Program-made: the position numbers and the translations under genes
DNA from: Macrostomum lignano
Lineage: Eukaryota
NCBI GenBank assembly: GCA_002269645.1
Contig: NIVC01000700.1
Coordinates: forward strand, 1-64,000
DNA length: 64,000 nt
Direction of reading: 5' to 3'
The notes under the pieces: generated by a model
What the model saw: the letters and a program-made list of their open reading frames with translations, nothing else
Database searches by the model: none
What the model was told of the DNA's origin: nothing
Part shown: piece by piece, positions 44,570-64,000 of the stretch
Numbering within the stretch: the stretch's first letter is position 1
Layout: each line of letters starts with the position of its first letter

Positions 44570-44790
44570 TAGACCGCCACAATTCGACCGCCACAAATTG
44601 ACTGCCACAAATTGACCGCCATAAACTGACCGCCACAATTCGACCGCCACAAATTGACTGCCACAAACTGACCGCCACAATTTGACCGCCACAAACTGAC
44701 TGCCACAATTTGACCACCTCAATTTGACCGCCACAATTTGACCGGCACAATGTGACTGCAACAATTTAACCGCAACAATTTGACCTTAAT
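44570..44790. repeat. 14-bp tandem repeat (AATTTGACCGCCAC), copy 1
   Basis: Read directly. Confidence 0.92.
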
Positions 44791-45315
44791 TTGAAATCTT
44801 AAATCCCCTGCAATGTCTAGACTTTAAATGAAAACAGTAGTAAGACGTCTAATCACAACGCATTTAATATGTATTTAAAAATACTTCATTTCTTTTTTAG
44901 ATACAAAAAAACTTCATCTCTAAACAAAATTTCAAACACAACGAAACAAAGATGACCAAATTTACACGAATAATGAAGAAATGAATAAAAATTACGAAAA
45001 CAAACTGCGAAAACTTCGAAAAAGGTATGTTAGACGATAACTGAAAAAGTCTAAAGTCTAAGTCTAAACTATTAATACTAACAAATCGACAAATGGGGTT
45101 TAAGCTACTAGGATTTTACTTTTGTCTGGGATAAACATGTATATTTGCGATTCAAAGAATGATAAATACTAGAAAGAGAAATATAAACTTTAAGCTTAAA
45201 AAACTATTGTTGTGATTAATCAAACGTGACAATTGTGATAATCAAATCAAATTGTTTTGCTTTTTAACCAAACATAACATTAATACGCAGTCTAAGCAAA
45301 CTTCATTTCTACCAA

Positions 45316-45865
45316 TGACTCATTGTCCAGAGCTCTGTACTCTATGATCATTATGTTCACACCTATGACTCATTGTCCACAGCTCTGTACTCTTTGATCA
45401 TTATGTTCACACATATGATTCATTGTCCACAGCTCTGTACTCTACGATCATTATGTTCACACCTATGACTCATTGTCCAAAGCTCTGTACTCTACGATCA
45501 TTATGTTCACACCTATGACTCATTGTCCAAAGCTATGTACTCTACGATCATTATGTTCACACCTATGACTCATTGTCCAAAGCTCTGTACTCTACGATCA
45601 TTATGTTCACACCTATGACTCATTGTCCACAGCTCTGTACTCTACGATCATTACGTTCACACCTTTGACTCATTGTCCAAAGCTATGTACTCTACGATCA
45701 TTATGTTCACACCTATGACTCATTGTCCAAAGCTCTGTACTCTACGATCATTATGTTCATACCTATGACTCATTGTCCAGAGCTCTGTACTCTACGATCA
45801 ATATGTTCACACCTATGACTCATTGTCCACAGCTCTGTACTCTATGATCATTATCTTCACAGCTT
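45316..45865. repeat. 50-bp tandem array derived from the 3' end of the adjacent ORF, 11 units
   Basis: Unit TGACTCATTGTCCAAAGCTCTGTACTCTACGATCATTATGTTCACACCTA; unit starts at 45316 to 45816 in 50-bp steps; the last unit is coding. Confidence 0.97.
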
Positions 45866-47274
45866 CGCAGAGCTCGACTGCGCTGTCGGCCAGAGACCTG
45901 ACGGAGTCCACCAAACCTGTCAGCTGTTTCTGGGCGTCCTCAGACACTTCAGCTTTCTGAGTGGAGAGCTTCAGCGCTTCTGAATGATCTGGGTACTGGT
46001 TCTGACGTGAGAGAGACAGTGCTGCATCCGCTTTGGAATTTGCATATGGAGTTCCTGCTTTAATAAATTCAACCTCCAGTTTTCGATCTTCTTTCAGCTT
46101 GGCCTGCCTGATACGGGCATCTCCGTTTACTTCGTTAAGCAGCTTATTCGCCTCGCCTTCAAATGTTTCGAGTCCGTCCCGGAAATTTCCTATTGCCTCC
46201 GACAGCCTGACCAAGCTGCTGCATATCTCTGATAGAATTACTTGCTTCTTTTCGTTTTTTGCTTTCCGTAGTTTCTTCAAGCTCTTCTTCACCTTCTTGA
46301 CGAGAGTCTTCGATTTAAGAGTGGTTCTTGGTAGCAGCGGCACTCTCTCGGCCTCAGTTGTCAGCGCAGATAGCTTGTCCTTGTACCCGTATTTTGGAGA
46401 CTTTTTTGTTAGCAGCTTGATTTTTTCCTGGATAGCTTTTGTCCGATCTCGAAAATAGTCTGTGTTGGAGGACTTCAGAGTTGCCAGGGCGCAGGCCTCG
46501 CACAAGAAGCAGGTTCCGACAGAATGAATCGAAGGTCGAGCCGCTGACAGTTGGCTATCTTGACTCTCTTGACCCCCTTGACTCTCTTGACCCCAACCAG
46601 AACAGATGCCACACTCCTTATTCCACATATTGGTTGTCCTCTTCGACCTTCGTACGATCAAATCCTGGTACAGCACGGCAATGCGCTTGCTTCCGAAGTC
46701 CACACACCTGGCATCATCAAGCGTTCTCACTGGTATCTTTTTGAAGTAGCCGACCATCTGACGAATGTTGCGGACAGGACTATCGATCTCAGATGCTTCC
46801 CTGCCTGCCTGCCCGGTGGAAGCACGCAGCTTTCTCAGTTCGTCCTCGCTTACCTTTGAGTTCTCGAGGCGAGAATCCAAGTCACCGATAGAGTCACAAA
46901 TCTTAAGACAAACCTTGACGAGTTCATCCAGGACCGGAGCCAGCTTCTTGCCGCAGAATGTGAGCTGTGAAGCCTTTTTATTTACACCTGAACAGAGATC
47001 TTTTGCTTCTTTGTGGAGCGCTCTGTCCTTCCGTTCGGCAACTATTCGAAGTTCGAACAGCTTTTTGCATGTCGTCTGGGCAAGACAAATAAGGTCTACG
47101 AATGGAAGGATTTCCTTAACTTTAAAATCGTTTTGGATTGATCTTTTTCGTCTCCGTGTCCACCGATTGAATCGAGCGCCACAATTCTTCATTCTTCAGG
47201 CATTTCACGAGCTTTAGCACGTTAGAAAGGCATTTGAATTCGGCTGACTTTTGTTTAGAAACGAAGCCTCCCAT
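45813..47274 (-). pseudogene. Orphan coiled-coil/Cys-His protein, copy 1, with a +1 frameshift near 47130
   Basis: ATG GGA GGC TTC GTT TCT AAA at 47274 matches the start of copy 2. AATCCAAAACGATTTT versus AATCCAAAAGATTTT in copy 2 shifts the frame. The remainder to TAG at 45813 is open. There is an 18-bp insertion (GQESQG) relative to copy 2. The frameshift could be a sequencing error. Confidence 0.8.
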
Positions 47275-48771
47275 GGAGTCTGCGGCAGTCGGGAATCTAG
47301 AAAATGGTGCAATGCAATCTCGAAATTTTTTTTTCTGGCCTTATTATTTTTTCTTCAAGCGGATATATAGATTCGCTTACACTATTCGCGAACACAACCT
47401 CCTGCCACGCGCAGCCTCTCTATCCAGCCCTCAAGTATTTCGACACTTTACAATATGAATCCCCGTCCGCTCAAAGTTGGTGTCTCTTTCTCAAGCTCTC
47501 TCTCTACATTCTCTCTTTTGTCTTCTCTCCCCTCTTCTCTCTCTTCTGCCGAAAAAAAAACTGCGCAAAAACACTGCCTGCTCAGCTGCAATAAAATACA
47601 CCCCGCCGGTGGATCGCTTGGCGCGCACCTAACCAACACAAAACAGAACGTACACACGCGGTGGGGGGGGGGGCGCACAGACGTAGGCCCAAGGCCCAAG
47701 AAGGCCTGCCTTAACACCCACGGGACGAGTACCCTTCGAAGTGCGTCTTGCAAGGTGAAAAGCATTAGACAGAGTCTCTTGAGCTATCAGCCCGCCAGGG
47801 GAGGCAGGTGTGAGCATCGCTGGCTGGGATAAGGGCCATACCAGTCTCATACTGCACAGATAGTTCACCACGCCATTGTGTGCACGACCCGAATTTCCTG
47901 GGGGCAGCAGCCCCGGCAGTAATTTGCCACATGACCCTTGACATCTTAGCAATTAGAGTAATTTTTGGTTGACACGACGAGTGTTGTATGGTTGAACCCT
48001 AACCCTTAACCCGCAGCCAAGTTACAGCATTTCAGCAATCCCCTCAGCCCAAAAAAATTATAAATTCCCCTATGAGCATTCCATATGAGCTTGAAAATCT
48101 AGCGACTTACCTTTTGATGTCTTGGAAATTCCACATGAGTCTTATGGATGAACCCTAACCCTGTCGAGTCACAGAATTTCAGCTCCCCCATGAGGCACAG
48201 CATTAACCAATTATGAACCTTGATATTTTGTGAATTTTTTCTCTGCATAATAATTCCAGCAATTCCCTTATGAGCCTTTGAAATCTCAGCTATTCCCTCG
48301 TGAGTCTTAGCGTCTCAACCATAACGCAAGAGCCACAGCTAACATCGTAACAGTGATCACCACATGAGCTTTCACACAGGCAATTTACCATGAGCCGTGA
48401 GCCACATGGGATATCTTTTCAGATATCCTCCCATGAGCCTTGACATCTTATGATCTTAGCAATTTCCAAATGAGTCTATTACATGCATGTTTGTCAGGCC
48501 AATTCTTTTATGGTTTAACCCTTACCCCTACCCTAACAATTCCTCCAACAGCCACAGCATTCCAGTAGCCACATCATTATAGCAATTCCCCCTGGGGCTT
48601 GAAATCTCAGAAATTCTCCCATGAGAATCTCTCATGTAATCAACAACCTGCAGTAATCCTTAGAAGCACTTAGTTGCCTCCAGAAATATGGTCTGGAGGC
48701 GAGGAACTCTTTCTGCACATCTCACATCTTTACATTCTATGATATGATCCTCCAAACGATATGATCTATAT

Positions 48772-49735
48772 GGTCTGGGGGAACTACCTTAGCAGTTTGC
48801 AGTTTTTCCCTTTGCAGTCTGCAATGATCCTTTCGACAATCTGCAGTTCTCCTGTCGGCCGGCTCCTCAGTCTCCTGCTTAGTAAACTACAATGATCTTT
48901 TCAACAATCTAAAAATTTGTTCACAAAAATTTGCTCACAATTTAGTAAGATTCATTCACTAATCAATTTTCGATACTTATCAACAGTCTTTTGCACAAAT
49001 CAGCATTATGCAATGCCTTCATCCCTAATAAATAGCAAGCATCCCCCAAAAGCAAGAAACCGCAGCATCACCCCCGTCAGCCTTGTAATCTCAACGATCC
49101 CCCTATAAGCCTTGAAACCTTAATTCAAGCAATTCTTCCAGTAAGCCATATGATATATCAGCAATTCCCCGTGAGCCTTGAAATCTCAGAAATTCACCAA
49201 AAAAGTCATGACATCTCAGCAATTCCTGATATATCCCCACAACAACCTTAAATTATCCCTTCAAATCCCACAAAACAGACTGCATTTATCCTTCAGTGGC
49301 CTAGAACTGTCCCATCAGCAAACCACAAAAATTCACTCAGCAGTCCACAGTAATCCCCTAAAAAACCTGCACCTAATCCACCAGTAATCATCCAGTCAAA
49401 ACTGCAGTTTTGAAACTGATGTAACTGATGAAGAGTTGTCTTCCTCAGAGGTCCACCAATCCTCCAAGCAGTCCCCTCAGCAATTTGCAGCTATACGCTT
49501 ATAAGTCGGGGGGAACTACCTCAGCAGTTTTCAGTTTGTCCCCTTTGCAGTTGCATGAATGATCCTTTCGACAATCTACAGTTCCCCTCAGCAGTCTTCA
49601 GTTCTCTTCCCGGCCGGCTCCTCAGTATCCTCAGCAAACTGAAATAAAGGATCCTTTCAGGAATCTAGTTTTTTTCTCAGCATTTATTACGGTTAACTAA
49701 CCGATTTTCGATACATATCGGCAGTTTTTTACAAC
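48772..49735. repeat. Diverged direct repeat pair of about 200 bp (48772-48985 and 49504-49735) within a degenerate CAGCAATTCCCC...GAGCCTTGAAATCT-type repeat region
   Basis: Shared GGGGGAACTACCT.AGCAGTTT.CAGTTT...GATCCTTTCGACAATCT...CGGCCGGCTCCTCAGT. Confidence 0.65.
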
Positions 49736-49793
49736 TACAACTCAGCCTTCATTTTAGCAATAACTTCAGCACCTTAGCAATTTAATACTTTCG

Positions 49794-52235
49794 TGTAGCT
49801 AGGGCAATACCTATTGATGCGATGAGTAATACTCGAAGCAGTTTTTTACAAATCAAATTTGCTTAGTGACTCATAAATCCCGCGTTGTCAAAGTCAACTT
49901 GCTTTAATACCAGACTCCCCTCGTTTTCAAACTTAAAGCTTTTGCCCGGCTCTGATGAGTATTCATCTGAGACTATCATACATGAATTCTTTCCTGCACA
50001 ACTAGTTCATGCTACGGTCACAACAATGGCGTTGCAACACCTTGGACCTTTAAATCTAACTGAACCTGAACTGAACTGACTTGGCTGACAGCATTTCGTG
50101 CGCTTGCCCGAGCAAAACAATGGCAAGATAATGAAGATGGAAAACGGATCGCGGACAATTTCATCGCTATTTGTGGCCTACCAGCCCTCGAGAAGCTCAC
50201 AGCTCTGCTTGCTCCAAAAGCTATCGAGACATAAACATTTGACGCAATACAAGAGGCCATCACAGCTTACCTGCAGCCTAACACCCGAATTATGCTAGCG
50301 GAGCGCACAAAATTCTACTTTCTGCGACAGAATGAAGGCTAAGTATTGCCGGACTTACTAACTAGACTACGTAAAGCTGCCAATCACTGCAGTTTTGATT
50401 CATTGAAGACGGCGGAGAGCCCTGAGGAAGAGATGATAAAGTTGGCTCTGATTGCTGGGATACGCTGCCCACGAACTCAGCAACGGGTACTCGAAGCATT
50501 CCAAATCAAAGAACTTCTGTCGGTTACGGACATCACAGACTTCGTCCGGCAGGCTGATCAAATGAAGGACTTCGTTACGAAGCAAGCAGCTGACGGGGTC
50601 AGCGTGACAATTGCGAACTCTGCTCATGAGTCATCCAAGGAGATTCATCACAACGACTCGGGACGCCCTAATGCCATCAAACGTGGCTGTGGCTACTGTG
50701 GAAGGTCGCATCCAGTGGGGAAATGTCCCGCCTATGGAAAAACATGCAGTAAGTGCACAAAGCCGAATCACTTTGCTAGTGTTTGTCGATCTTCTCGACC
50801 CAAGCAGACACATCATATGGAAGGCTCTATGACGCCTCGTGATGTGAAAGATCTTCACGTTGGTGAGATAAGCTCAGTTAACTCCGTCGACGCCAATATG
50901 GAGAACATCGTCATCGGCGAGGTCCGCGTTCCCATGCAGCTGGACACGGGAGCTGCAGTGACTGTCATCTCATCCACCATCTGGGAGTCTCTAAAGAGGC
51001 CACCGCTCCAAAAATGTCATCGCCACTTGCAGGCTTACGATGGTCACGATCTCAAGGTCCTCGGCACTCTCACGACTACCATAGACCGTGGCCGGCTACA
51101 TCCCGCTCAGCTGACCGTTGTCAAAGCTGAGAAGCAGTTTGGTCTGCTAAGCCGCGATCTTCTGCAATCTGACAGTCTCTTCAACGTGACTGAAGCCGCT
51201 CCCAAGGAGGACAAAACACTTTCGTTGATTACGAGCTAAGGGCGCTGAGGCGAAGATTTCACTCGTGGAAGGCGCTGCCCCAAAGTTCTGCCGAGCCCGT
51301 CTTGTGCCAATTGCTATGGAGTCTGTGGTAAACGCTGAGCTGGAGGGACTTCAACAACTGGGTGTGATCAAGCCTGTTGACGGCCCGGTAAGCAACTCCT
51401 CCCCGGTTGTATGGGTGAAGAAGAAGGACGGGTCACTCAGATAATTTGCGCTGATTACAGCGTACATGTGAATGCGAAAATTAAGTCTGAGGATTACCCT
51501 ATTCCTAGTGTAGAGCATCTCCTAGCCAAGTTGAAAAACGCAAAAGAGTTTGCCTCTGTTGATTTGCGATCTGTCTACTGGCAGATCAAGCTGGATGAGG
51601 CTGCGCAAGAGCTGTCAATCATAAACACTTCTAAAGGACTGTTCCGCGTAAAACGCTTGCAGATGGGTATGAAGAACGCGTCCTTTATTTTTCAACGCAC
51701 AATGGAACAGATTCTCTCCGACATGAAGGGCGTTTTGATCTACCAGGACGATGTGCTGGTTTTTGCTGAAAACTCTGACTCCCTGCACAAGCGCTTGCGC
51801 TCCGTGAAAACCAGGCTAGCCGAGAAACAAGTTACAATCAATGAAGCCAAGTGCGTTGAGGAGATCGATTAAATTTCTTTTCTTGGCTTCCAAATTTCCG
51901 CAGCCGGCATCAAGCCAGACAACCGACTTGTGGAGAAAATCAAACGCATTGCTGTCCCATTAGACAAAAAGGAGCTAGAGCATTTCATTGGCTTGGTAAA
52001 TTTCTTCGGCAGGCTCATCCCCAACTTTGCCGGCAAAGCGAAGCCGCTAAACGAGTTACGGCGGGACAACGTCGCGTTTGAGTGGACGGATGCCTGGAAT
52101 CGAGCGTTTGAAGCACTTAAGCAAGAGATTACGTCGCAGCCTGTGGTGCAACCTTATTCCTTGGAGAAGGAGGTCACCATCACAACTGACGCCTCAAAAG
52201 GCGCCCTTGCTGGTGTAGTGACTCGGAATGGCCAC
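49794..52235 (+). mobile_element. Decayed, 3'-truncated Ty3/Gypsy LTR retrotransposon (gag, protease, RT, partial RNase H)
   Basis: ORF 50346-51239 has tandem zinc knuckles (CGYCGRSH...C; CSKCTKPNHFASVC) and the protease motif LDTGA. About 51300-51872 has RT motifs (SPVVWV, DYPIP, VDLRSVYWQI, MGMKNAS.IFQR, YQDD). 51930-52232 has FIGLVNFF and RNase H TTDASKGALAGV, then breaks off; no integrase or 3' LTR. A tentative 5' LTR (TG...CA, 49794-50025) is followed by a PBS-like TGGCG at 50027; this boundary is low confidence. Confidence 0.9.
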
Positions 52236-52825
52236 CCCTACATGTATAATCTACATTTCCAGAAGCCTCTCCAAATCCAAGTTATCTCCAAGTTATCTTC
52301 ACGCTTCTTGCATGCAAATTTAGAAAAAAATCTGCGCGCTGGTTGTCCCTTTGATATTTGGTAAAAGCGCGCGGAATGTTGTTTTGCTGAGGTTTGCTGA
52401 GGTTTTCTGGTGTCATGCCATTTGCTGAGGTCTATATAAGCACTAGTACCACAACCGCCTAGCAACAACCGGCCTGGCTGACCGAGATGGCGTTCTTCCC
52501 TGAAGCTGCGATTGTCTCGAAGGAGGCCCTCGAACGCAAGGATGCGGCAATCCTCTTCGGAAAGGCAGAGAAGTGGAACAAACACGACAAACGGACTGCG
52601 AGCTCTGGCGTGGCGACCCAGCTCTGCATGCTGGGAGTAGCTGCCGCTCGTTTTTTCAGACCAAAAAGCCGGTAGAGGTCTTTCGCGGCATCGCCCGAAA
52701 TGAAGGCCACAGTCCGGACAGCGGCTCGGGAGGGACAACTATGGCCCGCGAGCTGCAGTGCCCGTGCTGACCGAGACTGCTGGCTGGGAGCCGGACAAGT
52801 CGAATACATCGACTGCTGACTGCTG

Positions 52826-53148
52826 CCTCAATTTGACCGCCACAATTTGACCGCCTCAATTTGACCTCTGCAATCTGACCGCCTCAATGTGACCGCCACA
52901 ATTTGACCGCCTCCATTTGACCGGCACAATTTGACCGGCACAATTTGACCGGCACAATTTGACCGCCTCAATCTGACCGGCACAATTTGACCGCCACAAT
53001 TTGACCGCCACAATTTGACCGCCTCAATTTGACCGCCACAATCTGACCGCCACAATTTGACCGCCACAATCTGACCGCCACAATCTGACCGCCACAATTT
53101 GAGCGGCACAGTTTGACCGGCACAATTTGACCGCAACAATTTGACCTT
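52826..53148. repeat. 14-bp tandem repeat (AATTTGACCGCCAC), copy 2
   Basis: Read directly. Confidence 0.92.
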
Positions 53149-53651
53149 AATTTGAAATCTTAAATCCCCTGCAATGTCTAGACTTTAAATGAAAACAGTA
53201 GTAAGACGTCTAATCGCAACACATTTAATATGTATTTAAAAAGACTTCATTTCTTTTTAGATACAAAAAAACTTCATCTCTAAACAAAATTTCAAACACA
53301 ACGAAACAAAGATGACCAAATTTACACGAATAATGAAGAAATGAATAAAAATTACGAAAACAAACTGCGAAAACTTCGAAAAAGGTATGTTAGACGATAA
53401 CTGGCAAAGTCTAAAGTCTAACTCTAAACTATTGATACTAACAAATCGACAAATGGGGTTTAAGCTACTAGGATTTTACTTTTGTCTGGGATAAACATGT
53501 ATATTTGCGATTCTAAGAATGATAAACACTAGTAAGAGAGATATAAACTTTAAGCTTAAAAAACTATTGTTGTGATAATCAAACGTGACAATTGTGATAA
53601 TCAAATCAAAGCGTTTTGCTTTTTTAACCAAACATAACATTAACACGCAGT

Positions 53652-54946
53652 TAGGGGTGTTCGGGTCGGTCATTTTTTCGGGGTTCGGGGTTTACCCCGA
53701 ACCCGGTACCCCTACCCCGAACCCCGAACCCCGTCCCGAACATTTCTTCCAACCCCGAACCCCGAACCCGGTACCAAAACCCGACCCGACCCCGAACGTA
53801 ACCCCGAACATTTTCACGCTTATTTTGGTCAATCATTTTAATAAATTAATACACTTTTTCCACCGATAAAGGTACAATATTAATTTGTATTTCACTTCAA
53901 TTGTAAGCCTTTTGGGCGCGACGTTAGCTCATGAATGACTTGGGACAAACACAGTTTATATTTGTTGTATAAGTGTAAATTATATTGCACAATTCTTATC
54001 CTTCAGCTTCAGGAAATTCAAACTGTAATTGTTAGTTACAATGTTAGTTAATTCGGTCATTTGTCATTTATTTTCAGTAGATGCTAGATAGTAGACTACA
54101 TACTGGGCTCATAGACAAAGTAAATGAATAATAATAGTAATATTACATCTATGAGTTTATTTAAGCTGCAAAAATAGAGTACAATAAAATTAGATTATAC
54201 CCTGTAGTGCAGATATCAGTAGAGATAGAACTAGAGCGATAAAGAGATAGCACAGATAAAACAATGAAACAATGAAACAGGAGAGTTAATCACAAATATA
54301 TATTTATTTTTACTTTTGACTACAGTTAACAGTAAGTCAGTAGTGGTATAACAGAATTGCTATGTAAAAACTAAAGTGACGTCTTTACATAAAATTGTAT
54401 GCTGATATGAGTAGGTAATCATTGTGATAATTGATTATTGGCGACTGATGCGTGGAGAATAATAGTGTATTTATAAATTTTAAGCTTCCTCATCCAATCC
54501 AGAAGTTCAGACCATGTTACACGTAGCACATGTAAAATTATTACTGAACGAAATTTTTTAAATCATCAACTGCAAGACTGAATGGGTCGAAAAACGACAA
54601 TCCTTATTTACCAGAAAGTGTAAATGAATCCATGGTTCTATCTGCTATTTCCGTTTCAAATTGTATGTAAAATATAATTTAATTTGTACCTGAAACTCAA
54701 TGCATATCTTTCGCATTGTGGATTTTGCATAAGGAGTAAAAAGTGCTTGAAAATACTCTTGAGAATGATAATTGTTCAAAACCCCGAAAACCCCGAAAAC
54801 CCGGTGGCCAAACCCGACCCGAACCCCGAACCCGGTAACCCTACCCCGAACCCCGAACCCGACCCGGAACACCTACCCCGAACCCCGAACCCGGTACCAA
54901 AACCCGACCCGAAACCCGACCCGACCCCGAACCCCGAACACCCCTA
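53652..54946. mobile_element. Non-autonomous hAT-type DNA transposon (MITE) with 8-bp TSD
   Basis: TIRs TAGGGGTGTTCGGG (53652) and CCCGAACACCCCTA (ending 54946). TSD CACGCAGT at 53644-53651 and 54947-54954. Subterminal ACCCCGA-type repeats, AT-rich non-coding interior. The empty site (TACGCAGT, single copy) is at about 45284-45291. Confidence 0.93.
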
Positions 54947-54978
54947 CACGCAGTCTAAGCAAACTTAATTTCTACCAA

Positions 54979-56528
54979 TGACTCCTTGTCCAGAGCTCTG
55001 TACTCTACAATCATTATGTTCACACCTATGACTCATTGTCCAAAGCTCTGTACTCTACGATCATTATGTTCACACCTATGACTCATTGTCCAAAGCTCTG
55101 TACTCTACGATCATTATGTTCACACCTATGACTCATTGTCCAAAGCTCTGTACTCTACGATCATTATGTTCACACCTATGACTCATTGTTCAAAGCTCTG
55201 TACTCTACGATCATTATGTTCACACCTATGACTCATTGTCCAAAGCTCTGTACTCTACGATCATTATGTTCACACCTATGACTCATTGTCCAAAGCTCTG
55301 TACTCTACGATCATTATGTTCACACCTATGACTCATTGTCCAAAGCTCTGTACTTTACGATCATTATGTTCACACCTATGACTCATTGTCCAGAGTTCTG
55401 TACTCTACGATCATTATGTTCACACCTATGACTCATTGTCCAGAGTTCTGTACTCTACGATCATTATGTTCACACCTATGACTCATTGTCCAAAGCTCTG
55501 TACTCTACGATCATTATGTTCACACCTATGACTCATTGTCCAAAGCTCTGTACTTTACGATCATTATGTTCACACCTATGACTCATTGTCCAGAGTTCTG
55601 TACTCTACGATCATTATGTTCACACCTATGACTCATTGTCCAGAGTTCTGTACTCTACGATCATTATGTTTACACATATGATTCATTGTACACAGCTCTG
55701 TACTCTATGATAATTATGTTCACACCTATGACTCATTGTCCAGAGTTCTGTACTCTACGATCATTATGTTCACACATATGATTCATTGTACACAGCTCTG
55801 TACTCTATGATAATTATGTTCACACCTATGACTCATTATCCAAAGCTCTGTACTCTACGATCATCATGTTCACACCTATGACTCATTGTCCAGAGTTCTG
55901 TACTCTATGATCATTATGTTCACACCTATGACTCATTGTCCAAAGCTCTGTACTATATGATAATTATGTTCACACCTATGACTCATTTTCCAAAGCTCTG
56001 TACTCTACGATCATCATGTTCACACCTATGACTCATTGTCCAAAGCTCTGTACTCTACGATCATTATGTTCACACCTATGACTCATTGTCCAAAGCTCTG
56101 TACTCTACGATCATTATGTTCACACCTATGACTCATTGTCCAAAGCTCTGTACTCTACGATCATTATGTTCACATCTATGACTCATTGTCCAAAGCTCTG
56201 TACTCTACGATCATTATGTTCACGCCTATGACTCATTGTCCAGAGTTCTGTACTCTATGATCATTATGTTCACAGCTATGACTCATTGTCCAGAGCTCTG
56301 TACTCTATGATCATTATGTTCACACCTATGACTCATTGTCCAGAGTTCTGTACTCTACGATCATTATGTTCACACCTATGACTCATTGCCCAGAGTTCTG
56401 TACTCTACGATCATTATGTTCACACCTATGACTCATTGTCCAGAGTTCTGTACTCTACGATCATTATGTTCACACCTATGACTCATTGTCCAGAGTTCTG
56501 TACTCTACGATCATTATCTTCACAGCTT
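54979..56528. repeat. 50-bp tandem array derived from the 3' end of the adjacent ORF, 31 units
   Basis: Unit starts at 54979 to 56479 in 50-bp steps; the last unit is coding. Confidence 0.97.
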
Positions 56529-57918
56529 CGCAGAGCTCGACTGCGCTGTCGGCCAGAGACCTGACGGAGTCCACCAAACCTGTCAGCTGGTTCCGGGCGT
56601 CCTCAGACACTTCAGCTTTCTGAGTGGAGAGCTTCAGCGCTTCTGAATTATCCGGGTACTGGTTCTGACGTGAGAGAGACAGTGCCGCATCCGCTTTGGA
56701 ACTTGCATATGAAGTTCCTGCTTTAATACATTCAACCTGCAGTTTTCGATTTTTTTCAACCTTGGCCTGCCTGATACGGGCATCTCCGTTTACTTCGTTA
56801 AGCAGCTTGTTCGCCTCGCCTTCAAATGTTTCGAGTCCGTCCCGGAAATTTCCCATTGCCTCCGACAGCCTGACCAAGTTGCTGCATATCTCTGATAGAA
56901 TTACTTGCTTCTTTTTGTTTTTTGCTTTCCGTAGTTTCTTCAAGCTCTTCTTCACCTTCTTGACGAGAGTGTTCGATTTAAGAGTGGTTCTTGGTAGCAG
57001 CGGCACTCTCTCGGCCTCAGTTGTCAGCGCAGATAGCTTGTCCTTGTACCCGTATTTTGGAGACTTTTTTGTAAGCCGCTTGATTTTTTCCTGGATAGCT
57101 TTTGTCCGATCTCGAAAATAGTCTGTGTTGGAGGACTTCAGAGTCGCCAGGGCGCAGGCCTCGCACAAGAAGCAGGTTCCGACAGAGTGAATCGAATGTC
57201 GAGCCGCTGACAGTTGGCTATCTTGACTCTCTTGACCCCAACCAGAACAGATGCCACACTTCTTATTCCACATATTGGTTGTCCTCTTCGACCTTCGTAC
57301 GATCAAATCCTGGTACAGCCCGGCAATGCGCTTGCTTCCGAAGTCCACACACCTGGCATCATCAAGCGTTCTCAGCGGTATCTTTTTGAAGTAGCCGACC
57401 ATCTGACGAATGCTGCGGATAGGACTATCGATCTCAGATGCTTCCCTGCCTGCCTGCCCGGTGGAAGCACGCAGCTTTCTCAGTTCGTCCTCGCTTACCT
57501 TTGAGTTCTGGAGGCGAGAATCCAAGTCACCGATAGAGTCACGAATCTTAAGACAAACCTTGACGAGTTCATCCAGGATCGGAGCCAGCTTCTTGCCGCA
57601 GAATTTGAGCTGTGAAGCCTTTTTATTTACACCTGAACAGAGATCTTTTGCTTCTTTGTGGAGCGCTCTGTCCTTCCGTTCGGCAACTATTCGAAGTTCG
57701 AACAGCTTTTTGCATGTCGTCTGGGCAAGACAAATAAGGTCTACGAATGGAAGGATTTCCTTAACTTTAAAATCTTTTGGATTGATCTTTTTCGTCTCCG
57801 TGTCCACCGATTGAATCGAGCGCCACAATTCTTCATTTTTCAGGCATTTCACGAGTTTCAGCACGTGAGAGAGGCATTTGAATTCGGCTGACTTTTGTTT
57901 GGAAACGAAGCCTCCCAT
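56476..57918 (-). CDS. Intronless orphan protein, 480 aa: MGxxxSK N-terminus, Lys-rich coiled coils, central CxxC...HxxxxCxxCxxC cluster
   Basis: Open frame from ATG 57918 (the ORF-track start at 57960 is a TTG) to TAG 56476. Non-repetitive; conserved in the paralog. No family recognised. Confidence 0.78.
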   Translation of the reverse strand: MGGFVSKQKSAEFKCLSHVLKLVKCLKNEELWRSIQSVDTETKKINPKDFKVKEILPFVDLICLAQTTCKKLFELRIVAERKDRALHKEAKDLCSGVNKKASQLKFCGKKLAPILDELVKVCLKIRDSIGDLDSRLQNSKVSEDELRKLRASTGQAGREASEIDSPIRSIRQMVGYFKKIPLRTLDDARCVDFGSKRIAGLYQDLIVRRSKRTTNMWNKKCGICSGWGQESQDSQLSAARHSIHSVGTCFLCEACALATLKSSNTDYFRDRTKAIQEKIKRLTKKSPKYGYKDKLSALTTEAERVPLLPRTTLKSNTLVKKVKKSLKKLRKAKNKKKQVILSEICSNLVRLSEAMGNFRDGLETFEGEANKLLNEVNGDARIRQAKVEKNRKLQVECIKAGTSYASSKADAALSLSRQNQYPDNSEALKLSTQKAEVSEDARNQLTGLVDSVRSLADSAVELCEAVKIMIVEYRTLDNES

Positions 57919-58181
57919 GGCATCTGCGGCTGATACGAAAGAATCTACAAAATGGTGCAATACAAGTCGTACTTGGATGCTTCAGCTTCCGCGAGGGCAA
58001 TACATAGCAGTGCGGATGGGGCTGGGTAACGGCCTGGCCAATGAAATGGAATGGAAGCATGGAAAGGAAAAATAAGGAACTAAGCTAGCCTCATTTCATC
58101 CCCATAACTTGCACAGCTGGACTCGTGCTCCAATACGGAACTAAAAAAGGGAAAGAAAAGTGGGGATAAAAGAGAGAGAGA

Positions 58182-59189: not shown

Positions 59190-59581
59190 GAAAAAGAGAC
59201 ACCAACCTTGAGCGGACGGTTGGTATTGCGAAGAGTCGAAATAACCCGAGGGCCGGATAGAGAGGCTGCGTGGGCCAGGCCACACGTACACCATGGGCCC
59301 TGGTGTACGTATGACTTTTTGCGTGCCAGAGTTTAAATTAGAACAAGGAACTACAGCAAGCAGATCAAAATTGTGGTGTACTTTGGTGAAAGAGGAAGTT
59401 CCTCTTTTGGAGAAAGAGGAAGTTCATAAACAAGCAGCAAACCCTGTAGTGCACAGAAAGCTAGTCTGCATTTGGGTAGATATTTGTAGCAGTGTGTGCA
59501 GTGAGCACCGCCATCCAAATTGGATAAAAAGTTTAATATGAGACTTACGGAAACTTACAATCCGGGACATTTCCTCATAGG

Positions 59582-62500
59582 GAGGGGAAGTGCCCGAGGG
59601 GAAGTGCCGGAGAGAAATTGCCGGAGGGGAAGTGCCGGAGGGGAAGTGCGGGAGGGGAAGTGCGGGAGGGGAAGTGCGGGAGGGGAAGTGCCGGACGGGG
59701 AAGTACGGGAGAATTGACGGAGGGGAAGTGCGGGAGGGGAAGTGCTGGAGGGGAAGTGCGGGAGAAGTGCGGGAGGGGAAGTGCGGGAGGGAAAGTGCGG
59801 GAGGAGAAATGCGGGAGGGGAAGTGCGGGAGCGGAAGTGCGGGAGAAGTGTGGGAGGGAAAGTGCGGAAGGGGAAGTGCTGGAGGGGAAGTGCAGGAGAG
59901 AAAGTGCGGGAGGGGAAGTGCGGAGGGGAAGTGCGGAGGGGAAGTGCGGGAGAGGAAGTGCGGGAGAAGTGCGGGAGGGGAAGTGCCGGAGGGGAAGTGC
60001 GGGAGGGGAAGTGCGGGAGGAGAAGTGCGGGAGAGAAAGTGCGGGAGAGAAAGTGCGGGAGGGGAAGTGCCGGACGGGGAAGTACGGGAGGGGAAGTGCG
60101 GAGGGGAAGTGCGGGAGGGGGAGTGCGGGAGGGGAAGTGCGGAGGGGAAGTGCGGAGGGGAAGTGCGGGAGGGAAAGTGCGGGAGGAGAAGTGCGTGAGG
60201 GGAAGTGCGGGAGAAGTGCGGGAGCGGAAGTGCGGGAGAAGTGCGGGAGGGGAAGTGCGGGAGGAGAAGTGAGGGAGGGGAAGTGCCGGAGGGGAAGTGC
60301 AGGAGAGAAAGTGCGGAAGGGGAAGTGCGGAGGGGAAGTGCGGGAGGGGAAGTGCCGGACGGGGAAGTGCGGGAGGAGAAGTGACGGAGGTGAAGTGCGG
60401 AGGGGAAGTGCGGGAGAGGAAGTGCGGGAGGGAAAGTGCGGGAGGAAAAGTGCGTGAGGGGAAGTGCGGGAGAAGTGCGGGAGCGGAAGTGCGGGAGGGG
60501 AAGTGAGGGAGGGGAAGTGCCGGAGGGGAAGTGCAGGAGAGAAAGTGCGGGAGGGGAAGTGCGGAGGGGAAGTGCGGGAGGGGAAGTGCGGGAGGGGAAG
60601 TGCGGAGGGGAAGTGCGGGAGGGAAGTGCGGGAGGGGAAGTGCGGAGGGGAAGTGCGGAGGGGAAGTGCGGGAGGGAAAGTGCGGGAGGAGAAGTGCGTG
60701 AGGGGAAGTGCGGGAGAAGTGCGGGAGCGGAAGTGCGGGAGAAGTGCGGGAGGGGAAGTGCGGGAGGAGAAGTGAGGGAGGGGAAGTGCCGGAGGGGAAG
60801 TGCAGGAGAGAAAGTGCGGAAGGGGAAGTGCGGAGGGGAAGTGCGGGAGGGGAAGTGCCGGACGGGGAAGTACGGGAGAATTGCCGGAGGTGAAGTGCGG
60901 AGGGGAAGTGCGGGAGAGGAAGTGCGGGAGGGAAAGTGCGGGAGGAGAAGTGCGGAGGGGAAGTGCGGGAGGGGAAGTGCCGGACAGGGAAGTACGGGAG
61001 AATTGCCGGAGGGGAAGTGCGGAGGGGAAGTGCGGGAGGGAAAGTGCGGGAGAAGAAGTGCGTGAGGGGAAGTGCGGGAGAAGTGCGGGAGCGGAAGTGC
61101 GGGAGAAGTGCGGGAGGGGAAGTGCGGGAGGGGAAGTGCGGAGGGAAAGTGCGGGAGGGGAAGTGCGGGAGAAGTGCGGGAGGAGAAATGCGGGAGGGGA
61201 AGTGCGGGAGAAGTGCGGGAGCGGAAGTGCGGGAGCGGAAGTGCGGGAGAAGTGTGGGAGGGAAAGTGCGGAGGGAAGTGCAGGAGAGAAAGTGCGGGAG
61301 GGGAAGTGCGGAGGGGAAGTGCGGAGGGGAAGTGCGGAGAGGAAGTGCGGGAGGGGAAGTGCGGAGGGGAAGTGCGGGAGGGGAAGTGCGGGAGGAGGGA
61401 AGTGCGGGAGAAAAGTGCGGGAGGGGAAGTGCGGAGGGGAAGTGCGGGAGGGGAAGTGCGGAGGGAAGTGCGGGAGGGGAAGTGCGGGAGGGGAAGTGCG
61501 GAGGGGAAGTGCGGGAGGGGAAGTGCGGGAGGGGAAGTGCGGGAGGGAAGTGCGGAGGGGAAGTGCGGAGAAGTGCGGGAGGGGAAGTGCGGGAGAAGTG
61601 CGGGAGGGGAAGTGCGGAGGAGAAGTGCGGGAGGGGAAGTGCGGAGGGGAAGTGCGGGAGAAAGTGCGGAGGGGAAGTGCGGAGGGAAGTGCGGGAGGGG
61701 AAGTGCCGGAGGGGAAGTGCGGGAGAGAAGTGACGGAGGGAAGTGCGGAGGGGAAGTGCGGGAGGGAAGTGCGGGAGGGAAAGTGCGGGAGGAGAAGTGC
61801 GGAGGGGAAGTGCGGGAGAAGTGCGGGAGCGGAAGTGCGGGAGGGGAAGTGCGGGAGGGGAAGTGCGGAGGGGAAGTGCGGAGAGAAGTGCGGGAGGGGA
61901 AGTGCGGAGGGGAAGTGCGGGAGGGGAAGTGCGGAGGGGAAGTGCGGAGAGAAGTGCGGGAGGGGAAGTGCGGGAGGGGAAGTGCGGGAGGGGAAGTGCG
62001 GGAGGGGAAGTGCGGAGGGGAAGTGCGGGAGGGGAAGTGCGGGAGGGGAAGTGCGGAGGGGAAGTGCGGAGGGGAAGTGCGGGAGGGAAAGTGCGGGAGG
62101 AGAAGTGCGTGAGGGGAAGTGCGGGAGAAGTGCGGGAGCGGAAGTGCGGGAGAAGTGCGGAGGGGAAGTGCGGGAGGGAAGTGCGGAGGGGAAGTGCGGA
62201 GGGGAAGTGCGGGAGAAAGTGCGGGAGGAGAAGTGCGGAGGGGAAGTGCGGGAGGGAAGTGCGGGAGGGAAGTGCGGAGAAGTGCGGGAGGGGAAGTGCG
62301 GGAGGGGAAGTGCGGAGGGAAGTGCGGAGGGAAGTGCGGGAGGGAAGTGCGGGAGAAGTGCGGGAGGAGAAATGCGGGAGGGGAAGTGCGGGAGGAGAAA
62401 TGCGGGAGGGGAAGTGCAGGAGAGAAAGTGCGGGAGGGGAAGTGCGGAGGGGAAGTGCGGAGGGGAAGTGCGGGAGAGGAAGTGCGGGAGAAGTGCGGGA

Positions 62501-64000
62501 GGGGAAGTGCCGGAGGGGAAGTGCGGAGGGGAAGTGCGGGAGGAAGTGCGGGAGAGAAAGTGCGGGAGAGAAAGTGCGGGAGGGGAAGTGCCGGACGGGG
62601 AAGTACGGGAGGGATGTGCTGAGGGGAAGTGCGGGAGGGGAAGTGCGGGAGGGGAAGTGCGGAGGGGAAGTGCGGAGGGGAAGTGCGGGAGGGAAAGTGC
62701 GGGAGGAGAAGTGCGTGAGGGGAAGTGCGGGAGAAGTGCGGGAGCGGAAGTGCGGGAGAAGTGCGGGAGGGGAAGTGCGGGAGGAGAAGTGAGGGAGGGG
62801 AAGTGCCGGAGGGGAAGTGCAGGAGAGAAAGTGCGGAAGGGGAAGTGCGGAGGGGAAGTGCGTGAGGGGAAGTGCCGGACGGGGAAGTACGGGAGAATTG
62901 CCGGAGGTGAAGTGCGGAGGGGAAGTGCGGGAGAGGAAGTGCGGGAGGGAAAGTGCGGGAGGAGAAGTGCGTGAGGGGAAGTGCGGGAGAAGTGCGGGAG
63001 CGGAAGTGCGGGAGGGGAAGTGAGGGAGGGGAAGTGCCGGAGGGGAAGTGCAGGAGAGAAAGTGCGGGAGGGGAAGTGCGGAGGGGAAGTGCGGGAGGGG
63101 AAGTGCGGGAGAAGAAGTGCGGAGGGGAAGTGCGGGAGGGGAAGTGCGGGAGGGGAAGTGCGGAGGGGAAGTGCGGAGGGGAAGTGCGGGAGGGAAAGTG
63201 CGGGAGGAGAAGTGCGTGAGGGGAAGTGCGGGAGAAGTGCGGGAGCGGAAGTGCGGGAGAAGTGCGGGAGGGGAAGTGCGGGAGGAGAAGTGACGGAGGG
63301 GAAGTGCCGAAGGGGAAGTGCCGGAGGGGAAGTGCAGGAGAGAAAGTGCGGGAGGGGAAGTGCGGAGGGGAAGTGCGGGAGGGGAAGTGCGGGAGGGGAA
63401 GTGCGGAGGGGAAGTGCGGAGGGGAAGTGCGGGAGGGAAAGTGCGGGAGGAGAAGTGCGTGAGGGAAGTGCGGAGAAGTGCGGGAGCGGAAGTGCGGGAG
63501 AAGTGCGGGAGGGGAAGTGCGGGAGGAGAAGTGACGGAGGGGAAGTGCCGGAGGGGAAGTGCAGGAGAGAAATTGCGGGAGGGGAAGTGCCGGACGGGGA
63601 AGTGCGGAGGGGAAGTGCGGAGAGAAGTGCGGGAGGGGAAGTGCGGAGGGGAAATGCGGAGGAAGTGCGGGAGGAGAAATGCGGAGGGGAAGTGCGGGAG
63701 GAGAAATGCGGAGAGAAAGTGCGGGAGGGGAAGTGCTGGAGGGGAAGTGCGGAGGGGAAGTGCGGAGGGAAATGTGCGGGAGGGGAAGTGCGGAGGGGAA
63801 GTGCGGAGGGGAAGTGCAGGAGAGAAAGTGCGGAGGGGAAGTGCGGAGGGGAAGTGCGGGAGGGGAAGTGCCGGACGGGGAAGTACGGGAGAATTGCCGG
63901 AGGGGAAGTGCGGCTTGGAAGTGCGGGAGAGGAAGTGCGGGAGAAGTGCGGGAGGGGAAGTGCCGGAGGGGAAGTGCGGGAGTGGAAGTGCGGGAGGAGA
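59582..64000. repeat. G/purine-rich 11-15-bp satellite (GGGAGGGGAAGTGC and variants), running off the window end
   Basis: Read directly; recurring rarer variants (CCGGACGGGGAAGTACGGGAGAATTGCC) show higher-order duplication. Confidence 0.97.

What the first reader, a model, noticed from the sequence alone, without database searches (positions are those of the whole stretch)
45316..56528. A satellite made from a gene's own last codons: the 50-bp arrays truncate the ORF and leave an apparent ancestral C-terminus beyond the array
Seen: in both paralogs the 50-bp unit is a copy of the ORF's final ~16 codons (V.IMIVEYRALDNES). There are 11 units in copy 1 (45316-45865) and 31 in copy 2 (54979-56528). 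The junction between units creates TCA-TAG-GTG-TGA, a double stop. The outermost unit lacks this junction and reads GAG TCA TTG GTA GAA ATG/ATT AAG TTT GCT TAG (ES-LVE[M/I]KFA*) in both copies. Inference: the ancestral single-unit gene ended in LVEMKFA. A non-triplet 50-bp duplication removed those 7 residues and then expanded into a variable-length 3'-UTR array. Contraction to one unit would restore the old C-terminus, so array dynamics could act as a C-terminal switch or 3'-UTR rheostat. The array might also yield small RNAs matching the mRNA end.
Basis: partly seen in the sequence, partly recalled or inferred. Interest (0 to 1): 0.75.

Follow-up and report, generated by a model that had tools for sequence, protein, structure and literature searches.

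The report
Minisatellite born from a gene's end
Two neighbouring copies of an orphan animal gene each end in a 50-bp tandem array that grew out of the gene's own last 16 codons, but this looks like ordinary repeat formation in a very repeat-prone, decaying locus and not a regulatory device.

Summary
Two direct paralogous segments each carry a minus-strand, intronless ORF. Copy 2 is intact at 480 aa; copy 1 is frameshifted. The last 50 bp of each ORF is the first unit of a 50-bp array, with 11 and 31 units. Interior junctions read TCA-TAG-GTG-TGA. Only the last unit reads TCA-TTG-GTA-GAA-AT[G/T]-AAG-TTT-GCT-TAG.

The best reading is a minisatellite formed in place: a non-triplet tandem duplication across the ORF's 3' end, later expanded by unequal exchange. 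It predates the segmental duplication, and the coding unit still exchanges variants with the non-coding units.

The "lost LVE[M/I]KFA tail" is plausible, about 60%. The two edge-private bases lie 6 and 4 nt from the array's outer ends. No array-less homolog exists to prove it: a search of 1.84 billion protein representatives found nothing.

The switch, rheostat and small-RNA ideas have no support:
- The paralogs evolve neutrally (dN/dS 0.68, CI 0.35-1.44), and the ORF diverges no more slowly than its non-coding flank.
- Copy 1 has a frameshift.
- A hAT-like element sits 8 bp after copy 2's putative old stop.
- A nearby 14-bp array varies in length just as much.
- 37% of the window is tandem arrays.

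Interest is low to moderate.

The parts
56476..57918 (-). Copy 2 ORF, intact. 480 codons plus TAG, intronless. Starts gccATGG with MGGFVSKQKS (a myristoylation-like MGxxxS motif). Ends ...AVKIMIVEYRTLDNES*.
   Evidence: - Sequence and translation.
- GC1/GC2/GC3 = 0.51/0.385/0.554.
- No Pfam family, no PDB match and no homolog in any search.
54974..56523 (-). Copy 2 50-bp array of 31 units. Unit 1 (56474-56523) is the ORF's last 15 codons, the stop and GT. Units 2-31 are non-coding.
54955..54973 (-). Copy 2 distal flank, A-GAA-ATT-AAG-TTT-GCT-TAG. With TTG-GT of the last unit it reads LVEIKFA*, the putative old C-terminus.
   Evidence: It has no similarity to the unit.
53652..54946 (.). 1295-bp non-autonomous DNA transposon, present only in copy 2. 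It has 14-bp perfect terminal inverted repeats (TAGGGGTGTTCGGG), an 8-bp target duplication CACGCAGT (53644-53651 and 54947-54954) and CCCGAA-like subterminal repeats. It sits 8 bp after the putative old stop.
   Evidence: - Inverted repeat pair I12.
- Ends and target duplication.
- The empty site in copy 1 is TACGCAGT at 45284-45291.
53147..53651 (-). Copy 2 AT-rich non-coding 3' flank, about 96% identical to that of copy 1.
52825..53146 (-). Copy 2 14-bp array (GCCACAATTTGACC), 23 units. This is the distal end of the duplicated segment.
45813..47274 (-). Copy 1 ORF, broken. It has the same ATG as copy 2, but a 1-bp insertion (C at 47130, codon 48) shifts the frame. It also has an 18-bp in-frame tandem duplication at 46559-46594. 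Ends ...AVKIMIIEYRAVDNES*.
   Evidence: and for the 18-bp repeat.
45311..45860 (-). Copy 1 50-bp array of 11 units. Unit 1 (45811-45860) is the ORF's end.
45292..45310 (-). Copy 1 distal flank, A-GAA-ATG-AAG-TTT-GCT-TAG. With TTG-GT of the last unit it reads LVEMKFA*.
44786..45291 (-). Copy 1 non-coding 3' flank. There is no AATAAA in it; the first ATTAAA lies 443 nt after the array.
44572..44785 (-). Copy 1 14-bp array, 15 units.

Best explanation
This is an ordinary minisatellite (VNTR) that formed in place, in a genome region that makes such arrays very readily.

**Proposed history**
1. A 50-bp segment was tandemly duplicated. It ran from codon 465 of an orphan, intronless ORF to 2 nt beyond codon 480, with only 1 nt of microhomology at the breakpoints.
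2. Because 50 is not a multiple of 3, the new junction shifts the frame and stops translation at once (GTG-TGA). A T-to-A change then made TAG one codon earlier.
3. This probably removed a 7-residue tail, LVE[M/I]KFA.
4. Unequal exchange and slippage expanded the array, including multi-unit steps of 100-200 bp.
5. The whole locus (14-bp array, 3' flank, 50-bp array, ORF and about 45 bp upstream) was then duplicated in direct orientation. The two arrays drifted to 11 and 31 units.
6. The coding first unit remains part of the array's exchange domain, so amino-acid changes at residues 471, 475 and 476 come from the array's variant pool.

**Function**
Nothing indicates that the array has one. It is a neutral by-product, and the gene pair itself is evolving neutrally or decaying.

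**Shown versus inferred**
- Shown: the anatomy, the unit counts, the variant distribution and the neutral divergence.
- Inferred: the order of events, the ancestral tail and the absence of function.
For: **Origin in place**
- The arrays are exactly 11 x 50 and 31 x 50 bp between unique flanks. Neither flank resembles the unit (P = 0.24-0.96 against shuffles).
- All 42 units lie in the two arrays.

**Edge pattern**
- G6 occurs only in the first unit and T47 only in the last unit, in both paralogs.
- All 40 other units have C at position 6, and all 40 other units have A at position 47.
- This is expected if the outermost bases keep the original state while the interior is homogenised.

**The array predates the segmental duplication**
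- The compound variant G31+A42+T48 is shared by copy 1 unit 9 and copy 2 units 15 and 17.

**Continuing exchange with the coding unit**
- A28 is found only in copy 2, in 11 units including coding unit 1.
- The three paralog differences inside the coding unit (positions 16, 28, 31) are exactly the three commonest array polymorphisms.
- In copy 2, units 1, 2 and 4 are identical apart from position 6.

**Multi-unit steps**
- Copy 2 units 15-16 match 17-18 (unit 18 has one extra change, A3), and units 20-21 equal 24-25.

**Neutrality**
- dN/dS is 0.68 (bootstrap CI 0.35-1.44; binomial P = 0.28).
- The ORF is 96% identical between copies, and so is the 505-bp non-coding flank.
- Copy 1 is frameshifted.
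- A transposon lies in copy 2's 3' flank.

**Background**
- 25 arrays cover 37% of the window.
- The co-duplicated 14-bp array also differs in length, 15 versus 23 units.
- An 18-bp tandem duplication lies inside copy 1's ORF.
Against: - No outgroup or array-less homolog is available, so the direction of the two junction changes is argued from position only.
- The case that T47 is ancestral rests on about a 1-in-10 to 1-in-20 positional argument.
- Both ORFs remain open over 432-480 codons after 57 substitutions. The chance of that under neutrality is about 0.065, so weak constraint on copy 2 cannot be excluded.
- The first 48 codons show 5 synonymous changes against 1 non-synonymous. That hints at some selection.
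- Expression, 3' ends and population variation could not be examined.
Confidence: 0.62

Rival explanations
1. There was no truncation. The ancestral single-copy gene already ended ...DNES-TAG. The 50-bp duplication simply included the stop codon and 2 nt of 3' UTR. The TTG in the last unit is a later neutral A-to-T mutation in non-coding DNA that both paralogs inherited. LVE[M/I]KFA was never translated.
For:
- A 7-codon open stretch after the array is expected by chance about 70% of the time.
- A duplication that leaves the protein unchanged is the easiest kind to fix.
Against: - The single private change of the last unit would have to fall on the stop codon and make it a sense codon, about a 5% chance.
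- It would also have to lie within 4 nt of the array's outer edge, about an 8% chance.
- The other edge-private base (G6) also sits at an outer edge. That fits edges preserving ancestral states.
Confidence: 0.25
2. The ORF captured a satellite that already existed. A 50-bp array, perhaps carried by a transposon, became fused to the ORF, which now reads 46 nt into it until the first stop.
For: - The region is saturated with minisatellites: 37% of the window.
- Transposon fragments lie nearby.
- Only 64 kb of the genome could be searched for the unit.
Against: - Both arrays are whole numbers of units between unique flanks. After an independent fusion this would happen only about 6% of the time.
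- The unit is absent from the rest of the window and from metagenome contigs.
- The predicted C-terminal helix (low confidence) runs from 439 to 479, straight across the unit boundary at residue 465.
- The proximal units of copy 2 are copies of the coding unit.
Confidence: 0.06
3. The array is functional. It acts as a length-variable 3'-UTR rheostat, a reversible C-terminal switch through collapse to one unit, or a source of small RNAs against the mRNA's own end.
For: - The array has persisted since before the segmental duplication.
- A three-unit RNA folds slightly better than shuffles (z = -2.8).
- The coding end and the array exchange variants.
Against: - The ORF evolves neutrally, and copy 1 is frameshifted.
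- A transposon separates copy 2's array from its former 3' flank.
- The neighbouring 14-bp array varies equally in length.
- The arrays are direct repeats with no inverted partner in the window.
- DNA folds of the unit are no better than shuffles.
- Restoring the tail would need a crossover between the first and last units within a 41-nt interval.
Confidence: 0.04
4. The arrays or their lengths are assembly artefacts.
For: Long arrays of near-identical units are hard to assemble, and unit counts may be wrong.
Against: - Each array has its own ordered pattern of variants and higher-order duplications.
- Both arrays sit between well-aligned unique flanks.
Confidence: 0.03

Closest known systems
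Minisatellites / VNTRs formed in place by tandem duplication and unequal exchange (for example the human 40-bp SLC6A3/DAT1 3'-UTR VNTR; from general knowledge)
   Same: - Head-to-tail units of tens of bp.
- Length differs between copies.
- Interspersed variant units and multi-unit duplications.
- Edge units differ from a homogenised interior.
- The array lies 3' of the stop codon that is actually used.
   Different: - The first unit is itself the end of the coding sequence, and the unit contains the stop.
- The array therefore probably created the present stop codon.
- Variation between individuals has not been examined.
Coding minisatellites in last exons (CEL 33-bp VNTR, PRDM9 84-bp zinc-finger array, mucins; from general knowledge)
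   Same: - A tandem array sits at the 3' end of an ORF.
- Array turnover rewrites the protein's C-terminal residues.
   Different: - Those units are multiples of 3 and are translated as protein repeats.
- Here the 50-bp period breaks the frame, so only the first unit is translated.
Tandem repeats arising just downstream of the coding region of LTR retrotransposons (Macas et al. 2009 and Vondrak et al. 2020, as listed in the references of PMC12692304)
   Same: Arrays arise immediately after an ORF and can seed satellites.
   Different: - The ORF here has no transposon domain or relative.
- Only two copies are known, in one tandem segmental duplication.
Gene-derived repeat loci that give small RNAs against the parent gene (Drosophila Su(Ste)/Stellate; from general knowledge)
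   Same: The repeat shares sequence with a protein-coding mRNA.
   Different: - No antisense or inverted arrangement is present, and there are no small-RNA data.
- The array lies in cis on the same transcript strand.

Membership tests
Minisatellite / VNTR formed in place | Head-to-tail units of about 10-100 bp with high identity | tested here: met
   50-bp period, 11.0 and 31.0 copies, 94% matches, no indels. 42 in-register units.
Minisatellite / VNTR formed in place | Derived from the local sequence: a whole number of units between unique flanks, and flanks that are not part of a wider repeat | tested here: met
   The arrays are 550 and 1550 bp. The flanks show no similarity to the unit. The unit is absent elsewhere in the window.
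Minisatellite / VNTR formed in place | Copy number varies between alleles or individuals | not testable with these tools
   Only two paralogs could be compared, with 11 versus 31 units. No population or read data are available.
Minisatellite / VNTR formed in place | Turnover by unequal exchange or conversion: interspersed variants, higher-order duplications, distinct edge units | tested here: met
   - A28 has spread to 11 units of copy 2 only.
- Copy 2 units 15-16 match 17-18 (unit 18 has one extra change), and units 20-21 equal 24-25.
- G6 and T47 are confined to the edge units.
Dispersed satellite DNA family | The same unit forms arrays at many unrelated loci | tested here: inconclusive
   No copies occur outside the two paralogous arrays in 64 kb or in metagenome contigs. 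The rest of the genome is not available.
Coding (in-frame) VNTR | The period is a multiple of 3 and the array is translated | tested here: not met
   The period is 50. Every frame of the gene strand has stops, and neither strand has an ORF longer than about 150 bp through the array.
Transposon-borne tandem repeat (3' region of an element) | The adjacent ORF is a transposon protein, or the segment has element termini | tested here: not met
   - No Pfam family above threshold.
- No homolog among 1.84 billion representatives.
- No terminal repeats were noticed at the ends of the segment; these were only inspected by eye.
Small-RNA-producing gene-derived repeat (Su(Ste)-like or hairpin locus) | An inverted or antisense arrangement able to give double-stranded RNA, and small RNAs mapping to the unit | tested here: not met
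   Both arrays lie on the same strand with no inverted copy in the window. The unit's DNA fold is no better than shuffles. The RNA fold z-score is only -2.8. The small RNAs themselves cannot be tested here.
hAT-like non-autonomous DNA transposon (the insertion in copy 2 only) | 8-bp target-site duplication, short terminal inverted repeats, and an empty site in a paralog | tested here: met
   - Target duplication CACGCAGT on both sides, with 14-bp perfect terminal inverted repeats.
- The empty site TACGCAGT is present in copy 1.
- The longest ORF in the element is 89 aa.
- No transposase homology is available to confirm the superfamily.

The most novel reading that the evidence does not exclude
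The array may be more than debris. The last 16 codons of a lineage-restricted gene sit inside the exchange domain of a non-coding minisatellite. Array turnover would then continually rewrite the protein's C-terminus, and on rare collapse to one unit would restore a tail 7 residues longer. Array length would tune the 3' UTR or feed small RNAs. That would make it a heritable, reversible C-terminal and expression switch driven by repeats.
Probability: 0.04. Interest if true: 0.6.

Novelty: new member of a known kind. Interest (0 to 1): 0.25.

Why it matters
This is a clean, datable example of how a minisatellite is born. Both original flanks, the junction, the protected edge bases and a later segmental duplication are all still readable.

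It shows two effects of a non-triplet tandem duplication at a gene's end:
- It can set a new stop codon.
- It can then draw the remaining terminal codons into concerted evolution with non-coding copies.

That makes it useful as a textbook illustration and for annotating this very repeat-rich genome. On present evidence it does not open a new mechanism. The gene is an orphan under no detectable constraint, and one copy is broken.

Tried and rejected
- **Protein homology.** Nothing was found in any search: the word-indexed search of 5.8 billion clusters, full HMMER over 1.84 billion representatives, Pfam (only sub-threshold CorA and Med19 noise), PDB sequences, and metagenome and viral contigs by back-translated patterns.
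- **Search for the unit elsewhere.** The 32-nt junction core was not found in metagenome contigs.
- **Structure.** The single-sequence AlphaFold2 model is all-helical but has pLDDT 41. That is too poor for a fold search, so none was run.
- **Flanks as decayed units.** Rejected.
- **Hairpin-prone unit as the driver of slippage.** Rejected, because DNA folds are no better than shuffles.
- **Bacterial promoter and terminator scan**. Irrelevant for an animal genome; the hits merely repeat with the unit.
- **Rfam.** No matches in the window.
- **Identifying the species from a host exon.** The FN2-domain ORF gave no hits. Only the LINE reverse transcriptase gave a taxonomic hint.
- **Literature.** Searches for stop-codon-spanning minisatellites found nothing specific.
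- **Region between the copies.** Pfam scans of ORFs in and beside it found nothing, and a direct-repeat search found only two short repeat pairs at about 750-bp spacing.
Full report
**What is there**

The window is animal DNA and is extremely rich in tandem repeats.
- TRF reports 62 rows, which collapse to 25 arrays covering 37% of the 64 kb.
- It also carries a LINE reverse transcriptase (5811-7175, minus strand), a gag-protease/RT/RNase H fragment of an LTR element (50346-52364, plus strand) and an ORF with a fibronectin type II domain.
- The nearest named relatives of the LINE RT are from the flatworm Macrostomum lignano, at 66-76% identity. The source is therefore probably a flatworm-like animal whose proteins are not in the searched collections.

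The finding's range holds two direct paralogous segments, about 93-95% identical.
- Copy 1 spans 44572-47317. Copy 2 spans 52825-57965.
- Read on the minus strand, each has about 45 bp of upstream sequence, an intronless ORF, the 50-bp array, about 505 bp of AT-rich non-coding flank, and a 14-bp array.

**The ORFs**

Copy 2 (57918 to 56476) is intact.
- It has 480 codons and starts at gccATGG with MGGFVSKQKS, a myristoylation-like motif.
- GC1/GC2/GC3 is 0.51/0.385/0.554, which is typical of coding sequence.

Copy 1 shares the ATG at 47274.
- An inserted C at 47130 (codon 48) breaks the frame.
- An 18-bp in-frame tandem duplication lies at 46559-46594.

The protein has no detectable relative anywhere.
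- The word-indexed search found 0 hits.
- A complete HMMER pass over 1.84 billion representatives found 0 hits.
- Pfam, PDB and metagenome or viral contigs gave nothing significant.
- A single-sequence AlphaFold2 model is all-helical at pLDDT 41.

**Checking the observation**

- All 42 in-register units (11 + 31) lie in the two arrays, with none expected by chance.
- With the phase GTGAA...TCATnGGT, unit 1 of each array is the ORF's last 15 codons, TAG and GT.
- Interior junctions read TCA-TAG-GT|G-TGA-AC.
- The last unit reads TCA-TTG-GT and is followed by A-GAA-AT[G/T]-AAG-TTT-GCT-TAG.
- The unit has stops in all three gene-strand frames, and neither strand can be read through the array.

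**How the array arose**

Four observations point to birth in place from the ORF's own end.

1. *Whole numbers of units.* Both arrays are exact multiples of 50 bp between unique flanks, and neither flank resembles the unit. An independent fusion of an ORF to a foreign array would give this only about 6% of the time.
2. *Edge bases.*
   - Only two bases are private to the edge units and shared by both paralogs: G6 in the first unit (AAG, where 40 other units have AAC) and T47 in the last unit (TTG, where 40 other units have TAG).
   - They lie 6 and 4 nt from the array's outer boundaries. Crossovers and conversion tracts cannot replace bases there.
   - The simplest history starts from a single copy GCT|GTGAAG...TCATTGGT|AGAAATG and a tandem duplication with 1 nt of microhomology.
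   - Two changes at the new junction followed, T47 to A and G6 to C. Unequal exchange between the two units then produces only C6/A47 interior units.
3. *Age.* The compound variant G31+A42+T48 is shared by copy 1 unit 9 and copy 2 units 15 and 17. The array therefore already had several units before the segmental duplication.
4. *Multi-unit growth.* Later growth included multi-unit steps: copy 2 units 15-16 match 17-18 (unit 18 has one extra change), and units 20-21 equal 24-25.

**The coding unit is still part of the array**

- A28 occurs only in copy 2, in 11 units including coding unit 1.
- The three paralog differences inside the coding unit fall at positions 16, 28 and 31. They give I/V471, A/T475 and V/L476, and they are exactly the three commonest array polymorphisms.
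- In copy 2, units 1, 2 and 4 are identical apart from position 6.
- The protein's last residues are therefore being rewritten by exchange with non-coding copies.
- This is the most interesting detail of the locus.

**The "lost tail"**

If the array arose in place while the ORF existed, the single-copy ancestor read through one unit into the flank and ended ES-LVE[M/I]KFA*. The exception is an ancestor whose position 47 was already A.

- That rival history needs the same two mutations.
- The positional argument favours an ancestral T47 by roughly 10-20 to 1. Under the rival history, the single private mutation of the last unit would have to hit the stop codon and also lie at the extreme edge.
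- No outgroup is available, and a 7-codon open stretch is not evidence in itself.
- I put the truncation at about 0.6.
TAG came afterwards.

**Function**

Nothing supports a switch, a rheostat or a small-RNA role.
- Nei-Gojobori dN/dS between the paralogs is 0.68 (CI 0.35-1.44; binomial P = 0.28).
- The ORF is 96% identical between copies, and so is the non-coding 3' flank.
- Copy 1 is frameshifted.
- A 1295-bp non-autonomous, hAT-like element has inserted in copy 2, 8 bp after the putative old stop (53652-54946). It has 14-bp terminal inverted repeats and the 8-bp target duplication CACGCAGT, and copy 1 keeps the empty site. The insertion cuts the array off from its former downstream flank.
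- The co-duplicated 14-bp array differs in length just as freely, 15 versus 23 units.
- The arrays are direct repeats with no inverted partner.
- DNA folds of the unit are no better than shuffles, and a three-unit RNA is only mildly stable (z = -2.8).

Two observations go the other way and are weak.
- Both ORFs stay open after 57 substitutions (P about 0.065 under neutrality).
- Codons 1-48 show 5 synonymous changes against 1 non-synonymous.

**Comparison and verdict**

The locus works like any minisatellite formed in place, and it meets the defining features that could be tested.
- It is not an in-frame coding VNTR, because the period is 50.
- It is not demonstrably a dispersed satellite, a transposon-borne repeat or a small-RNA locus.
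- It is a neat, well-preserved new member of a known kind. The functional speculation is unsupported.

Noticed in passing
window 53644-54954: A 1295-bp non-autonomous DNA transposon is present only in copy 2. It has 14-bp perfect terminal inverted repeats (TAGGGGTGTTCGGG), an 8-bp target duplication (CACGCAGT) and CCCGAA-like subterminal repeats. The intact empty site in copy 1 is at 45284-45291. It looks hAT-like and inserted after the segmental duplication.
   Followed up: yes
window 57775-57918 and 47130-47274: The first 48 codons (MGGFVSKQKS..., a myristoylation-like start) differ between the paralogs by 5 synonymous changes and 1 non-synonymous. Codons 49-480 differ by 8 synonymous and 29 non-synonymous. 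Copy 1's frameshift falls exactly at this boundary and leaves a 50-codon ORF. This may mean constraint on the N-terminal part only, or it may be a small-number effect.
   Followed up: partly
window 56701-56760 (copy 2 codons 387-406) and the matching part of copy 1: There is a cluster of amino-acid differences between the paralogs: 8 non-synonymous changes in 20 codons, including four consecutive codons (CTG AAA GAA GAT versus GTT GAA AAA AAT). This looks like a complex mutation or a micro-conversion.
   Followed up: no
window 46559-46594: An 18-bp in-frame tandem duplication (GGGGTCAAGAGAGTCAAG x2) lies inside copy 1's ORF and is absent from copy 2. The same duplication process is acting within the coding region.
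   Followed up: partly
window 44572-44785 and 52825-53146: A 14-bp array (GACCGCCACAATTT) forms the distal end of the duplicated segment. It has 15 units in copy 1 and 23 in copy 2.
   Followed up: partly
window 1-64000: 25 tandem arrays cover 37% of the window, with periods of 2-177 bp. They include a 4.4-kb G-rich array (GGGAGGGGAAGTGC, about 329 copies) at 59580-63997, a 2.7-kb 28-bp array at 18483-21152, and a 42-bp array at 10311-12211 that is open on both strands.
   Followed up: no
window 5811-7175 (-), 7731-8369 (-), 50346-52364 (+): There are LINE fragments (RT, with a weak endonuclease match) and LTR-retrotransposon fragments (gag-protease, RT, RNase H). The LINE RT's closest named relatives are Macrostomum lignano proteins at 66-76% identity, with unnamed metagenome proteins reaching 86%.
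   Followed up: partly
window 15549-16205 (+): An ORF with a fibronectin type II domain (Pfam E = 1.7e-14) lies between a 10-bp array and a TCA array on one side and a 15-bp array on the other. It is probably an exon of a host gene. No close protein was found in the collection.
   Followed up: partly
window 8368-8698: A 177-bp tandem duplication with 1.9 copies at 100% identity, next to the LINE fragment. It is very recent.
   Followed up: no
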